Virus record (IMG/VR): IMGVR_UViG_3300036770_003943
Span: 1-64,000 of that record
Reading direction: 5' to 3' (one strand)
DNA length: 64,000 nt
Positions 4,911 to 9,665 of this stretch are shown here, one piece after another. Every line of letters starts with the position of its first letter. Position 1 is the stretch's first letter. The notes under the pieces were generated by a model. It searched no databases, was not told the DNA's origin, and saw nothing but the letters and a program-made list of their open reading frames with translations. The position numbers and the translations under genes were made by a program.

Positions 4911-5543
4911 TTATACTATAAACCAATTGCCATCGCGGCAAAATAAATGAACACTTTGCCACGGCACTTCCATGACGTATTCTGACTCACCATCAATGGT
5001 ACTTCCGTCACTGGCGGTAACAGTTACTTTACGATTGCCGATAGGCGGGCCCATTTCAACCTTTACAATAATTTGATGACTATCTGGGCAATCTGAGGGA
5101 AGAGTGATAGTAACCGGTCCAGAACTATTAATGCCAATATAACAATCATTGTCATCAGCAGTGTAGTCTTGTGTAACCAAAATTGCTTCGCAGTGGTAAT
5201 CACAGTCTCCAGGCGGTCCAGGAGGGCCAGCTGGTCCTGTGTCACCTTGAGGACCTTGTTCTCCAGGCGGTCCTGGCGGTCCTTCAGGTCCTTGAATGCC
5301 TTGTTCTCCAGGAGGTCCAGGCGGACCAGGAGGTCCAGGAGGTCCGGGTGGACAGTCGCAGTTTTTCTCTTGGTTTTGATTAATGATGACGGTATCATTA
5401 CCTGCTCCAGTGTCAATGTCAATTCTTGCGCCTGCTAGAACTCTTTGAGCCTGTTGAACAAGTTCAGGATTAGGTCTTTCTCCAGATGTTAATTTTAAAA
5501 GAGCTTCGTTGAGTTCAACTAGTCTTCTTTCCATGGGCGTCAT
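4911..5543 (-). CDS. Collagen-like (Gly-X-Y) protein with C-terminal beta domain
   Basis: GPP/GEQ/GDT triplet run at ~5213-5350 flanked by Cys pairs; ATG at 5543 preceded by GGAG. Confidence 0.8.
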
Positions 5544-5553
5544 AGCAGTCTCC

Positions 5554-5581
5554 AAAAAGCAGCAGCCTCGTGAGCCGCTGC
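5554..5581 (-). terminator. Intrinsic terminator after 5607-6212
   Basis: GCAGCGGCT-CACGA-GGCTGCTGC stem followed by TTTTT on the minus strand. Confidence 0.65.
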
Positions 5582-6311: not shown

Positions 6312-6977
6312 TTATCTAGCAGTCAGAGCCAATTGTGTTCTATTACGCACACACATATTTTTCATTACCGCACTGACATGAATCTTTACAGTGCTTTCAC
6401 TTATTTTTAACACCGTGGCAATTTGCTTATTACTGAGTCCGCGATTGGCAATAAGATCAAATACCTGCCGTTGCCTATCAGTCAGATGAATTTCGTTTGT
6501 TTTGTTGGGTCTTATTGTATTACCTGACAAATTTTGTATAATATGCTTTGGCCAATAGGATTTCTGTTCCAACAATGTTGTTATAGACTGTTTACCTTCG
6601 TCGATACCATAATCAGACAGCAATGGAAAAAGTCCGTCAACCCCAGATTTTTGCATCTCTTTGATATCAGATATATGCGTGTCTTTACCCACACCAAGAA
6701 CGACCAAAGGCCTTTTATCAACACTGTTGAATTTGAACAAGGTATCCATCATTAACATAAATTCACTTAAAGAACTGTGTTTTTTTACAAAGGTAGAAGA
6801 GATTGCAATGACATCTATGCCAGATTTCAAATAGCTGTTGAGTTCTTTGAAATTCTCACAGTACTTTACTTTCACTGGCCAATCTTCAAAGTCACTTTCT
6901 TTGACATTGTTTTCATCTAAATACTGTCGATAATTTTCACGAAAAATTACTAACCTGGGTTTTTTGTTTGCTGGCAT
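6312..6977 (-). CDS. NarL/FixJ (LuxR-HTH) family transcriptional regulator with degenerate receiver domain
   Basis: LTDRQRQVFDLIANRGLSNKQIATVLKISESTVKIHVSAVMK is a clear LuxR-type HTH; probable ATG at 6977 after TAAGGAG. Confidence 0.85.
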   Translation of the reverse strand: MPANKKPRLVIFRENYRQYLDENNVKESDFEDWPVKVKYCENFKELNSYLKSGIDVIAISSTFVKKHSSLSEFMLMMDTLFKFNSVDKRPLVVLGVGKDTHISDIKEMQKSGVDGLFPLLSDYGIDEGKQSITTLLEQKSYWPKHIIQNLSGNTIRPNKTNEIHLTDRQRQVFDLIANRGLSNKQIATVLKISESTVKIHVSAVMKNMCVRNRTQLALTAR

Positions 6978-7153: not shown

Positions 7154-7176
7154 AAAAAGGGCACCTAAGTGCCCTT
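7154..7176 (-). terminator. Intrinsic terminator closing the tmRNA gene
   Basis: AAGGGCAC-TTAG-GTGCCCTT followed by T run. Confidence 0.8.
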
Positions 7177-7530
7177 GGTAAGTTTGGTAACAAGGTCTTT
7201 CCTACCCCGTCAGGCTTAAGCGGCTAGCTTAACTTCCTGATAAAAATAGTCGTCATTTGCGTCTATTTAGTTTGCTAGGATTACGTCCTTCGCCTATCGC
7301 ATCGTCTGGTCAAATACTGCATCACCTGTCGAACCTAATTCCGGCCCATCATAATCAGTCTGTATCGCCATTGACCCAATCAACTGTCCATATTGCTGCT
7401 TCTTCAGTTTTTGCCAGCAATCTTTTATGAACTCATTGATTTTCTGCCACATACAAACTCCTTATGGTGGACCGGGCGGGGAACTGCCCCCCGCGTCCAG
7501 TTAATTCTTCTTATTCCTTCATACGATGAT
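7177..7530 (-). ncRNA. ssrA: tmRNA, circularly permuted (two-piece) gene
   Basis: Acceptor piece ends ...GCGGGG-GGCAGTT-CCCCGC-CCGGTCC-A-CCA at 7465. Coding piece starts GGGCCGG at 7347 and pairs with CCGGUCC including the G3.U70 Ala identity pair. Tag frame 7260-7216 = ANDDYFYQEVKLAA*. Outer ends are approximate. Confidence 0.92.
7294..7452 (-). CDS. 52-aa ORF starting in the tmRNA intervening segment and overlapping the coding piece
   Basis: TAAGGAG directly after CCA, 5-nt spacer, ATG; MWQKINEFIKDCWQKLKKQQYGQLIGSMAIQTDYDGPELGSTGDAVFDQTMR*. Confidence 0.55.
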   Translation of the reverse strand: MWQKINEFIKDCWQKLKKQQYGQLIGSMAIQTDYDGPELGSTGDAVFDQTMR

Positions 7531-7536
7531 AACAAG

Positions 7537-7542
7537 TATTTA
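7537..7542 (-). promoter_or_regulatory. Late-type TAAATA box upstream of the tmRNA acceptor piece
   Basis: Same TAAATA motif as precedes structural genes in this window. Confidence 0.55.
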
Positions 7543-7544
7543 TT

Positions 7545-7628
7545 TTATGTAAACATTACTGCTAATACAAACATTAGCACTAGCAATGAGAATATTACAG
7601 TGGTATTTTTATTTTCCGGGTCGACCAT
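7545..7628 (-). CDS. 27-aa single-pass membrane peptide
   Basis: Manual translation MVDPENKNTTVIFSLLVLMFVLAVMFT; fills the gap exactly. Confidence 0.5.
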   Translation of the reverse strand: MVDPENKNTTVIFSLLVLMFVLAVMFT

Positions 7629-7827: not shown

Positions 7828-8223
7828 TCATTGAAATGTTTGCGTAAACCTGCGACCTCGATATTCAAATGTAACTATTTCACCAGCTAAAACTTGAACA
7901 GGCTGTTGACTACAACGTATCTGCATTTCTACTGTGCCACCGTCGTTTTGACTACCCAGTTGTCCGCCAATTACAGCACCAGCTGCTGTGGCAATTTCTC
8001 TGCCATGACCTCCGCCAATTTGATTACCAATGGCAGCACCGACAATGGCGCCGACTACACCACCTCCTGTATTTCGTCTTTCAACTGGGACCTGAGTACA
8101 CTGTTGTTGATAGCTAGTAACATATCTAGGCTGACGTGCCACAACAACAGCAACATCTTGTGTCATTGACTGGGCGTAGACGGTTGGACTAATTAACAAA
8201 AGTGATAGAATAAGTTTTTTCAT
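7828..8223 (-). CDS. Glycine-zipper 2TM envelope protein with signal peptide
   Basis: MKKLILSLLLISPTVYA signal; GGVVGAIVGAAIGNQIGGGHGR..ATAAGAVIGGQLG zipper. Confidence 0.85.
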   Translation of the reverse strand: MKKLILSLLLISPTVYAQSMTQDVAVVVARQPRYVTSYQQQCTQVPVERRNTGGGVVGAIVGAAIGNQIGGGHGREIATAAGAVIGGQLGSQNDGGTVEMQIRCSQQPVQVLAGEIVTFEYRGRRFTQTFQ

Positions 8224-8816: not shown

Positions 8817-9665
8817 CTATGTCCAAAGACTTTCCCGAATTTTGATCAAACGACACATCATTTCGGTATCTTCGTCTTGTTGTTCTTGCTCAATCTTTTG
8901 ACATAGATCCAAAATTCTCATAGTTTCCTTACGCTCATCCTCGGTCTCGCTTTCGCTGCCTAAAAATGCCAAATCACTTAACCCTTGTTCTCTGGCTTTT
9001 TCTCTACTCAAATCACAGCGAGCACTCCAACCACTGGCATCGTGTGGGTCTGGACGGTTGGGATAGACTTCTTTCCACCAAGTGTATAGTTCAAGAATTT
9101 CCCGTGCTGCTATGGCTTGATGAGTGGGTTCTTCCCGTTCGCCCTCTTCAATAAAGTCTTTATTGGTCAAAGTCATTGCCCATTTAAGATGATCTACACC
9201 GGCTTCTGGACTACGCCAAGTACGCCAACGGAACCATCCTGTGGAATACCAAGGACTCTTATATTTCTCACGAGCCTCCTTGTCCCAGGCTATGTGACTC
9301 CAAGCAGACTCAACTTCAACAAAATCAACGAGCTCATTGAAAAGACAAGGCAGAAAACGATTACCAACATCACGCCACTGCCCCCGTGGAATATCTCTTG
9401 GGTGTGCAGTAAGAGCGTGAGTGCGAGTGATCCAACGATTATTAATATAATACTTAAGGTCATAAACACGATCAATAGGCCACCATAAAAAACTCTGTAC
9501 GTAGTCAAGACCTTCTTCAGTGATCCAATATCTAATGGGATACTTTTCCTTGGAGGCCTTATGCCATGTGGCCCAACCCAGACTGGTCTCGGCAGTGGGC
9601 TTGTCTGATCCACGTAGCCAATCAGCAAACCTGCTACAACTCCAGTAATGTTTTCTAGTGGCCAT
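8817..9665 (-). CDS. Hypothetical Trp-rich phage protein
   Basis: 282-aa ORF with AAGGA RBS. Confidence 0.8.
   Translation of the reverse strand: MATRKHYWSCSRFADWLRGSDKPTAETSLGWATWHKASKEKYPIRYWITEEGLDYVQSFLWWPIDRVYDLKYYINNRWITRTHALTAHPRDIPRGQWRDVGNRFLPCLFNELVDFVEVESAWSHIAWDKEAREKYKSPWYSTGWFRWRTWRSPEAGVDHLKWAMTLTNKDFIEEGEREEPTHQAIAAREILELYTWWKEVYPNRPDPHDASGWSARCDLSREKAREQGLSDLAFLGSESETEDERKETMRILDLCQKIEQEQQDEDTEMMCRLIKIRESLWT

What the first reader, a model, noticed from the sequence alone, without database searches (positions are those of the whole stretch)
7294..7464. Protein-coding intervening segment in the tmRNA: processing would create a nonstop mRNA that is a substrate for the tmRNA itself
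Seen in sequence: the 117-nt intervening segment begins with TAAGGAG immediately after CCA, then 5 nt, then ATG (7452). The frame crosses the predicted RNase P site (7348/7347) exactly at a codon boundary after 35 codons and stops at 7294 inside the coding piece (52 aa; amphipathic WQKINEFIKDCWQKLKK N-terminus). Established: this spacer is a short excised linker in the Caulobacter two-piece tmRNA, and E. coli arfA uses an RNase III-cut nonstop mRNA so that ArfA accumulates only when trans-translation fails. Inference: the uncut precursor yields the 52-aa protein while ribosomes melt the tRNA-like domain. The cut RNA yields a stop-less 35-codon message whose product is tagged and degraded. This would be a self-contained sensor or feedback switch coupling tmRNA maturation and activity to a small effector peptide.
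Basis: partly seen in the sequence, partly recalled or inferred. Interest (0 to 1): 0.85.

Follow-up and report, generated by a model that had tools for sequence, protein, structure and literature searches.

The report
Frameshifted small gene inside phage tmRNA
A giant phage's two-piece tmRNA gene carries a small protein gene in the stretch that is cut out during maturation; the 52-codon reading frame that seemed to cross the cutting site exists only because one A is missing, but protein genes in this slot turn out to be common in phages and seem not to have been described.

Summary
The sequence facts are correct. A complete permuted (two-piece) tmRNA gene lies on the minus strand. Its 117-nt intervening segment (IVS) starts with TAAGGAG directly after CCA, and an ATG ORF of 52 codons crosses the predicted RNase P site.

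Five homologous IVSs (L230, L514, L512, L513, L516) share the same ribosome-binding site and ATG, but they encode a conserved 32-34 aa peptide that stops at a TGA 7 nt before the RNase P site. The window lacks one A in an A-run (A5 instead of A6). Its conserved C-terminus is intact, but sits in the -1 frame. The read-through ORF is therefore a frameshift allele or an assembly error, not a nonstop sensor.

The "protein-coding IVS" part is real and general. Among 91 IVS families of phage two-piece tmRNA genes, 36 hold an ORF that starts just after CCA and spans the IVS (10.4 expected). These include a thioredoxin, a PGDYG protein and HNH homing endonucleases. I found no report of this in the searchable literature.

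The parts
7465..7528 (-). Acceptor piece of the two-piece tmRNA: 5' strand of P2, T-arm, 3' acceptor strand CCGGTCC, then ACCA. The encoded CCA is at 7467-7465.
   Evidence: Rfam RF04321 alignment, model positions 1 to about 65; sequence.
7348..7464 (-). Intervening segment (IVS), 117 nt, removed on maturation. It folds as a long hairpin whose closing stem pairs the ribosome-binding-site/start region with the end of the peptide gene.
   Evidence: MFE -30.1 kcal/mol, z = -3.9, 0 of 200 shuffles as stable. The closing stem is invariant in 4 homologues. Closing stems are general in IVS families.
7458..7463 (-). Shine-Dalgarno AAGGAG, 1 nt after CCA and 5 nt before the ATG.
   Evidence: Identical in L230, L512, L513, L514 and L516. 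An SD core in the first 12 nt occurs in 21 of 36 ORF-bearing IVS families and 3 of 55 ORF-less ones.
7408..7452 (-). Codons 1-15 of the conserved small-peptide gene (MWQKINEFIKDCWQK).
   Evidence: aligned with L230/P0122.
7408..7412 (-). A-run of 5 A, the frameshift site. Homologues L230 and L514 have 6 A.
   Evidence: Alignments. L514 is an independent contig with A6.
7355..7408 (-). Conserved C-terminal 17 codons (TEEAAIWTVDWVNGDTD) plus stop TGA 7357-7355. They are intact but in the -1 frame relative to the ATG.
   Evidence: Translation. Identical to the L230 C-terminus. The substitution pattern is synonymous in this frame.
7294..7452 (-).
7177..7347 (-). Coding piece of the tmRNA: 5' acceptor strand GGGCCGG (with G3.U), P2, and the tag reading frame 7260-7216 (ANDDYFYQEVKLAA, stop TAA).
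   Evidence: Rfam alignments; sequence.
7157..7176 (-). Intrinsic-terminator-like hairpin plus T-run that ends the tmRNA transcription unit.
   Evidence: 1 site found, 0.3 expected.
7526..7553 (-). Promoter-like site (TTTACA, 16 nt, TG-TATCAT). Weak evidence: the number of such sites equals the shuffle expectation, and it overlaps the 5' end of the Rfam match.

Best explanation
The locus is a jumbo-phage two-piece (circularly permuted) tmRNA gene. Its excised intervening segment doubles as the coding sequence of a small protein of an uncharacterised family: about 32 aa, consensus MWQxIKxW..ESW..T.EAAxWTVDWVxGD, predicted as two helices.

In the normal allele the gene starts at an AAGGAG/ATG that abuts the CCA end. 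It stops at a TGA 7 nt before the RNase P site, inside the 3' arm of the IVS closing stem. In the window one A is missing from an A6 run. Frame 0 therefore misses that TGA and runs 17 codons into the mature tmRNA, while the true C-terminus sits intact in the -1 frame. The 52-aa ORF is a recent frameshift mutation or a homopolymer assembly error, not an evolved read-through.

Shown: the homology, the frames, the selection pattern, the hairpin, and the generality of coding IVSs.

Inferred: (1) the primary transcript serves as mRNA; (2) ribosomes load on the ribosome-binding site as soon as it emerges, before the 3' arm is transcribed; (3) once the IVS is free of ribosomes, the closing stem (ribosome-binding site opposite the stop codon) and the acceptor stem form; (4) RNase P and 3'-end processing then release the two tmRNA pieces. 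On this allele, ribosomes in frame 0 would make an aberrant product, or stall at the cut end and be rescued. That would be a by-product of the deletion.
For: The tmRNA is complete.

Homologous IVSs have the identical ribosome-binding site, ATG and MWQ: L230, L514 and L516, L512 and L513. All five end at GAC TGA TTATGAT|GGG. The window's -1 frame, 7408-7358, translates to the conserved C-terminus.

Whole-ORF pN/pS is 0.26-0.51 in frame and 0.6-1.2 off frame.

A profile search finds 15 further small proteins of 29-51 aa. Some lie outside tmRNA genes: between two tRNA genes in L517, and in an ordinary gene array in L518. It is therefore a real protein family.

Class level: 36 of 91 IVS families carry a spanning ORF against 10.4 expected (P about 1e-24); for 130-300 nt it is 16 of 18 against 0.5; the reverse strand gives 5. 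The IVSs include a thioredoxin (PF00085, 75 bits), a PGDYG protein and HNH endonucleases, inside Rfam-confirmed tmRNA genes. Other IVS peptide families have pN/pS of 0.07-0.77 in frame.
Against: There is no expression data of any kind. The ribosome-binding site and AUG are largely base-paired in the predicted closing stem, which could block translation of the folded RNA. The closing-stem pairs never vary among the four aligned homologues, so the structure has no covariation support. I cannot tell whether A5 is a true mutation or an assembly error, because no reads are available. The peptide has no known function or homologue with a function.
Confidence: 0.75

Rival explanations
1. One reading: the 52-codon frame is the designed product. 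RNase P cleavage converts it into a nonstop message whose 35-aa product is tagged by the tmRNA, giving a self-contained sensor of tmRNA maturation or activity.
For: The frame-0 ORF exists and crosses G1 at a codon boundary. In other IVS families ORFs do read into the mature coding piece: 9 of 24 ORF-bearing families with an IVS of 97 nt or more. One such family (L429/L433/L138/L420) keeps this under purifying selection, with pN/pS of 0.07-0.48. The architecture is therefore tolerated elsewhere.
Against: All five homologues use the other frame and terminate inside the IVS. The conserved motif EAAxWTVDW is lost from the frame-0 product. Across families the ORF ends fall at -1 (15), inside the IVS (6) and as read-through (15), with no preference for read-through.
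Confidence: 0.04
2. The A5 run is a recoding site. Ribosomal -1 slippage of tRNA-Lys on A-AAA, or transcriptional slippage, restores the 32-aa peptide in a fraction of events, so two products are made.
For: A -1 shift after the AAA codon (7410-7408) gives exactly the L230 protein. The downstream frame carries no further damage.
Against: There are only five A's, no X-XXY-YYZ heptamer and no conserved stimulator. The closest relatives simply have A6, and L512/L513 have no A-run at all. An intact downstream frame is equally expected for a very recent deletion or an assembly error.
Confidence: 0.05
3. The IVS is only an RNA processing hairpin (for example an RNase III or RNase P guide). Its ORF is never translated, and its conservation reflects RNA structure alone.
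For: The hairpin is strong (z = -3.9). ORF-less IVSs have the same closing stem and similar z-scores. The three window-L230 differences are all compatible with the structure. The ribosome-binding site is partly sequestered.
Against: Third-position, synonymous substitution pattern. The same peptide family is encoded outside tmRNA genes. An SD core is present in 21 of 36 ORF-bearing and 3 of 55 ORF-less IVS families. Domain-bearing proteins are encoded in other IVSs. The interior helices are not conserved between the window and L512/L513.
Confidence: 0.1

Closest known systems
Two-piece (circularly permuted) tmRNA of Caulobacter and other Alphaproteobacteria, some Betaproteobacteria and cyanobacteria (Keiler, Shapiro & Williams 2000; Sharkady & Williams 2004, as cited in PMC11915505); Rfam RF04321/RF01849/RF01850
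   Same: The gene order is acceptor piece, CCA, IVS, coding piece. It has a G3.U acceptor stem, a tag ending in LAA, and an IVS removed by tRNA-processing enzymes. Full-length Rfam match.
   Different: Here the IVS is long (117 nt) and carries a ribosome-binding site plus a conserved peptide gene. The described IVSs are treated as non-coding linkers. The 2025 tmRNA database paper singles out only an IVS with a tRNA gene and one with a repeat element.
Phage-encoded two-piece tmRNAs of aquatic phages (OM43 phage Melnitz, pelagimyophages; PMC9004378)
   Same: A complete ssrA in large aquatic myophages. Two-piece forms predominate in aquatic phages.
   Different: That work reports a glutamine riboswitch in the gene. 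In the passages I read and the text searches I ran, it reports no protein-coding IVS.
Intron-form tmRNA genes whose group I intron carries a LAGLIDADG homing endonuclease gene (PMC11915505)
   Same: A tmRNA gene interrupted by a segment that is removed from the RNA and that can carry a protein gene, including a homing endonuclease.
   Different: Removal here is by RNase P and 3' processing of a permuted gene, not by self-splicing. The site is between CCA and G1, not the T-loop. The cargo is HNH endonucleases, a thioredoxin and small peptides.
E. coli arfA (nonstop mRNA made by RNase III; product repressed by trans-translation; PMC10107115)
   Same: Only as a concept: an endonucleolytic cut inside an ORF would yield a nonstop message subject to tmRNA.
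   Different: In the conserved allele of this gene the stop codon lies upstream of the cut. The read-through is a frameshift artefact. Nothing indicates a ribosome-rescue function for the peptide.
Dual-function RNAs (SgrS/SgrT, RNAIII/hld) and small ORFs within tRNA gene clusters of large phages (from my own knowledge, not checked here)
   Same: One transcript yields both a functional RNA and a small protein. The MWQ peptide gene also occurs between two tRNA genes (L517).
   Different: The coding part here is the portion discarded from the mature RNA. It overlaps the processing stem.

Membership tests
Permuted / two-piece tmRNA (Rfam RF04321) | Covariance-model score above the gathering threshold over the whole model | tested here: met
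   108.7 bits against 47, model positions 1-213, not truncated.
Permuted / two-piece tmRNA (Rfam RF04321) | Permuted order: T-arm, 3' acceptor strand and CCA upstream; 5' acceptor strand GGG... downstream; complementary, with G3.U70 | tested here: met
   CCGGTCC-ACCA at 7474-7465 pairs with GGGCCGG at 7347-7341, G3 opposite T.
Permuted / two-piece tmRNA (Rfam RF04321) | Tag reading frame with a GCA resume codon, ending in hydrophobic ..LAA plus a stop | tested here: met
   7260-7216 reads ANDDYFYQEVKLAA then TAA.
Permuted / two-piece tmRNA (Rfam RF04321) | Processing into two RNAs and activity in trans-translation | not testable with these tools
   No RNA data are available.
   Five homologues stop 7 nt before G1. 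The window frame results from a 1-nt deletion.
   Needs reporters in ssrA/smpB mutants.
MWQ small-peptide family (unnamed; alignment A4) | N-terminal MWQ..[IL]..[WF], length 29-39 aa | tested here: met
   Window codons 1-15 are 14 of 15 identical to P0122.
MWQ small-peptide family (unnamed; alignment A4) | C-terminal motif EAAxWTVDWVxGD in frame with the start | tested here: not met
   The motif is present and intact, but in the -1 frame. The window holds a frameshifted member.
Homing-endonuclease-bearing IVS (L234, L239, L243, L213) | An HNH endonuclease ORF in the IVS | tested here: not met
   The window ORF has no Pfam or PHROG hit. The window IVS is only 117 nt.

The most novel reading that the evidence does not exclude
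Translation of IVS-encoded genes is mechanistically coupled to tmRNA maturation in phages. Ribosomes loading on the ribosome-binding site that abuts CCA would keep the closing and acceptor stems open, and so time RNase P processing. In the roughly one third of families whose ORF reads into the mature coding piece (for example the L429 family, under purifying selection), cleavage would create nonstop messages that the tmRNA itself clears. The IVS would also be an exchangeable gene-cassette slot, being better conserved than the tmRNA body between loci.
Probability: 0.15. Interest if true: 0.85.

Novelty: new variant of a known kind. Interest (0 to 1): 0.55.

Why it matters
For the finding as written: the attractive self-targeting nonstop switch is not there. 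The read-through is a one-base deletion in a conserved small gene, which is a useful caution for ORF-based readings of single sequences.

For the field: the intervening segment of permuted tmRNA genes has been treated as a disposable linker. In phages it is frequently a protein-coding slot holding small peptides, a thioredoxin and HNH homing endonucleases. The ribosome-binding site is fused to the CCA end, and the gene's end is built into the processing stem. The slot is also better conserved than the surrounding tmRNA body between loci.

This raises three directly testable questions:
- How do translation and tRNA-type processing share one precursor?
- Is the excised IVS a stable mini-mRNA?
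- Are tmRNA genes safe harbours for mobile genes?

It also matters for annotation. ARAGORN missed this gene, and gene callers produce chimeric ORFs such as P0001.

Tried and rejected
- ARAGORN on the window found no tRNA or tmRNA.
- GenBank phages: no DNA match to the locus or to 25 kb of the window. No protein match to the peptide. The L508 tmRNA gave only short T-arm or thioredoxin matches.
- Synteny route: the LuxR-like neighbour has no relative but itself. The 282-aa neighbour has 466 relatives, but the flanks are not syntenic and none of the 14 loci searched holds a tmRNA.
- The 52-aa ORF as a protein query found only itself in IMG/VR. In 5.8 billion proteins it found only P0001, a gene-caller chimera that runs from the IVS end through the tag frame of L230. 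P0001 finds only itself.
The host therefore remains unidentified.
- The T-arm-specific metagenome scan mostly returned standard bacterial tmRNA 3' ends.
- I first read L230's extra A as a frameshift in L230, a contig with very low coverage. L514, L512, L513 and L516 reversed that: the window is the odd one.
- I considered the IVS ORFs as decayed homing-endonuclease remnants. I rejected this because there is no similarity and the ORFs start inside the closing stem.
- Pfam, PHROGs, PDB sequences and the ESM Atlas gave nothing for the peptide family. The AlphaFold model shows two helices only, and I did not take it to a fold search.
- The flanks of L230 (Bmp-like and a 181-aa protein) looked bacterial. 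The 181-aa family, however, sits in phage-like contigs.

Full report
**What is in the window.** The window is part of IMG/VR contig IMGVR_UViG_3300036770_003943, 231,776 bp. It is a jumbo myophage-like genome with a tail sheath, a large terminase, a ribonucleotide reductase and helicases, almost all on the minus strand. On that strand Rfam finds a complete permuted tmRNA at 7528..7216 (RF04321, 108.7 bits against a gathering score of 47; also alpha_tmRNA, 68.8 bits). ARAGORN reports nothing. A terminator-like hairpin follows at 7176-7157.

- CCA at 7467-7465, TAAGGAG at 7464-7458, five bases, then ATG at 7452.
- A 117-nt intervening segment (IVS), 7464-7348.
- G1 of GGGCCGG at 7347, exactly at the start of codon 36.
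- TAG at 7296-7294.
- A tag frame, 7260-7216, reading ANDDYFYQEVKLAA.

The next gene downstream (ATG 6977) uses the same TAAGGAG.

**The IVS as RNA.** The 117 nt fold into one long hairpin (MFE -30.1 kcal/mol, z = -3.9, no shuffle as stable). The closing stem pairs IVS positions 1-3 and 6-14 (the ribosome-binding site and start region) with positions 100-108 and 111-113. The last four bases, UGAU, remain as a leader before G1.

**Finding relatives.** Nothing similar exists in GenBank phages. Neighbouring genes gave no syntenic tmRNA. The 52-aa ORF has no relative in IMG/VR. Pattern scans built on the tmRNA itself were productive. Pooled, they gave 181 permuted tmRNA loci with 152 distinct IVSs in 104 sequence families. 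Rfam confirmed the eight of nine representative loci that it detected as complete permuted tmRNAs: L508 136 bits, L512 118, L429 112, L232 109, L209 105, L513 105, L441 87 and L230 85. L239, whose IVS is 517 nt, did not reach threshold.

**The decisive comparison.** A protein search picked up P0001, a gene-caller ORF on ENA contig L230. The IVS of L230 is 97% identical to the window's but has one more A in the A-run. I first took this for a frameshift in a contig with very low coverage. Four further homologous IVSs settled the direction:
- L512 and L513, from a scan for CCA-TAAGGAG-N3-5-ATGTGG.
- L514 and L516, found through a profile search and contig look-ups.

All five share the ribosome-binding site, the ATG and the N-terminus MWQ. 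All encode a 32-34 aa peptide ending ..EAA[IT]WTVDWV[NY]GDTD (GEAGEWTVDWVNGDTD in L516). All stop at a TGA that lies 7 nt before G1 (GAC TGA TTATGAT|GGG).

L514 is an independent JGI contig. It has the A6 run, encodes a peptide identical to that of L230, and contains a tmRNA scoring 107 bits.

In the window, codons 1-15 (7452-7408) match this family. The remaining 17 codons are present and undamaged, but in the -1 frame (7408-7358, stop at 7357-7355). The window therefore lacks one A in the run 7412-7408.

The substitution pattern confirms which frame is under selection. Over the whole ORF, pN/pS is 0.26-0.51 in frame against 0.6-1.2 off frame.

The 52-codon ORF is thus made of 15 real codons, 20 out-of-frame codons, and 17 codons dictated by the tRNA-like domain. 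Whether A5 is a genuine recent mutation or a homopolymer assembly error cannot be decided without reads. A -1 slip on the A-run would restore the protein, but nothing supports recoding: there are only five A's, no heptamer, relatives have A6, and L512 and L513 have no run.

**The peptide family.** A profile of three peptides searched against 1.84 billion representatives returned 15 more small proteins of 29-51 aa. Their consensus is MWQxIKxW..ESW..T.EAAxWTVDWVxGD. Contexts vary:
- Some are in tmRNA IVSs (L514, L516).
- One lies between two tRNA genes, starting 9 nt after the first tRNA and ending 6 nt before the next (L517).
- One sits in an ordinary overlapping gene array (L518).

It is therefore a real small phage protein, not a by-product of the hairpin. 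It has no match in Pfam, PHROGs, PDB sequences, GenBank phages or the ESM Atlas. AlphaFold predicts two helices (pLDDT 88). Its function is unknown.

**Coding IVSs are general.** I took one representative per IVS family of 60-300 nt (91 families) and kept the first 25 and last 14 nt fixed in the shuffles.
- 36 families have an ATG within 25 nt of CCA whose frame stays open to the IVS end, against 10.4 expected (P about 1e-24).
- For IVSs of 130-300 nt it is 16 of 18 against 0.5 expected. For 97-130 nt it is 8 of 14 against 2.1.
- Shorter IVSs are near chance. The reverse strand gives 5.

An SD core in the first 12 nt is found in 21 of 36 ORF-bearing families but only 3 of 55 ORF-less ones (Fisher P = 2.5e-8), with spacings of 3-9 nt in 20 of the 21.

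The cargo includes:
- a thioredoxin (L508, PF00085, 75 bits);
- a PGDYG-domain protein (L441);
- HNH homing endonucleases (L234, L239 and L243 match phrog_655 or PF01844; L213 matches phrog_2255).

L239 is the 40-nt IVS of L232 plus a 477-nt endonuclease insertion. The two share an identical T-arm and a 93%-identical coding piece.

Three other small-ORF families with diverged members show their lowest pN/pS in the ORF frame (0.07-0.77).

ORF-bearing and ORF-less IVSs have the same closing stem (a median of 10 of the first 11 nt paired with the last 22) and similar z-scores. The gene is therefore built into the processing hairpin, with the ribosome-binding site opposite the last codons and the stop.

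**Where the ORFs end.** Of the 36 ORFs, 15 end at -1, using the TRA of the conserved TRAT leader. Six end 7-14 nt inside the IVS. Fifteen read into the mature coding piece. For IVSs of 97 nt or more the counts are 9, 6 and 9. Read-through is thus tolerated. In the L429 family it is conserved under purifying selection, but it is not preferred. This is the only remaining support for a nonstop-type coupling, and it does not concern this gene's conserved allele.

**Mosaicism.** Between loci that share the MWQ cassette, the IVS is the best-conserved segment. Identities for the acceptor piece, the IVS, coding-piece nt 1-60 and coding-piece nt 61-190 are:
- window vs L230: 66%, 97%, 95%, 81%;
- window vs L514: 69%, 97%, 70%, 82%;
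- window vs L512: 75%, 78%, 62%, 62%.

The bodies are of different Rfam types: alpha_tmRNA for the window, beta_tmRNA for L512 and L513. The cassette, or the tmRNA modules around it, are exchanged between genes.

**Mechanism (inference).** The precursor would be transcribed from upstream of 7528 to the terminator. The ribosome-binding site emerges right after the acceptor piece, so ribosomes can start before the 3' arm exists. When the IVS is free of ribosomes, the closing stem and the acceptor stem form, and RNase P and 3'-end maturation release the two tmRNA pieces. In the intact allele the excised IVS would be a complete mini-mRNA with its ribosome-binding site occluded. In the window's allele, frame-0 ribosomes would run into the tRNA-like domain, or to the cut end, as a by-product of the deletion. 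None of this has been tested.

**Literature.** Two-piece tmRNAs in aquatic phages are known (PMC9004378). The 2025 tmRNA database paper notes homing endonuclease genes only in group I introns of intron-form genes. For permuted genes it notes only an IVS with a tRNA gene and one with a repeat element (PMC11915505). Full-text searches for coding IVSs found nothing. Absence from this library is not proof of novelty.

**Verdict.**
- Observation: confirmed.
- The protein-coding IVS: supported, and it extends to a widespread and apparently undescribed feature of phage two-piece tmRNA genes.

Noticed in passing
L239:2722-3177 (+), compared with L232; also L234, L243 (empty counterpart L242) and L213: HNH homing-endonuclease genes are inserted in the IVS hairpin of phage two-piece tmRNA genes. 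L239 and L232 are a presence/absence pair: T-arm 100% identical, coding piece 93%, IVS prefix of 17 nt and suffix of 29 nt shared.
   Followed up: partly
L508:213-464 (-), inside tmRNA L508:28-539: A complete thioredoxin (WCGPC motif, PF00085, 75 bits) is encoded in a 268-nt IVS. Its ribosome-binding site follows CCA directly, and its stop is in the TRAT leader. L441 similarly encodes a PGDYG-domain protein.
   Followed up: partly
L517:1419-1687: A member of the same MWQ peptide family sits between two tRNA genes, 9 nt after one and 6 nt before the next. The family therefore tends to occupy spacers of tRNA-type precursor transcripts.
   Followed up: partly
window 7348-7464 compared with L230, L514, L512 and L513: The IVS cassette is more conserved than the tmRNA acceptor and coding pieces around it, and it occurs in alpha-type and beta-type tmRNA bodies. 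This suggests cassette or module exchange.
   Followed up: partly
L395:122-480 (also L396): A 105-nt IVS starts like the window's (TAAGGAG, ATG, MWKRI..) but has a TAG after 12 codons. The tag ANDDYFYQDLKLAA and the 3' part are close to the window's. It is possibly a decayed or divergent cassette.
   Followed up: no
L230:651-806 (P0001): The gene caller produced a 51-aa 'protein' that starts in the IVS end, runs through the tRNA-like domain and finishes in the tmRNA tag frame, because the TAG of the window is CAG there. This is an annotation artefact of unrecognised tmRNA genes.
   Followed up: yes
window 8817-9665 (-): A 282-aa protein with no Pfam or PHROG match has 466 relatives in IMG/VR (up to 94% identity), but the surrounding DNA is not conserved between contigs. 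It is a widely shared phage gene of unknown function.
   Followed up: partly
window 6312-6977 (-): A LuxR/GerE-type HTH protein (PF00196, 60.6 bits) lies immediately downstream of the tmRNA terminator and has the same TAAGGAG ribosome-binding site. It has no relative in IMG/VR other than itself.
   Followed up: no
window 7828-8223 (-) and 4911-5555 (-): A secreted glycine-zipper 2TM protein (PF05433) lies upstream of the tmRNA. A collagen-repeat protein (GPP repeats, PF01391) lies downstream.
   Followed up: no
window 1-64000: ARAGORN finds no tRNA and misses the permuted tmRNA that Rfam scores at 108.7 bits. Surveys of phage tmRNAs based on ARAGORN probably undercount genes with a long IVS.
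   Followed up: no
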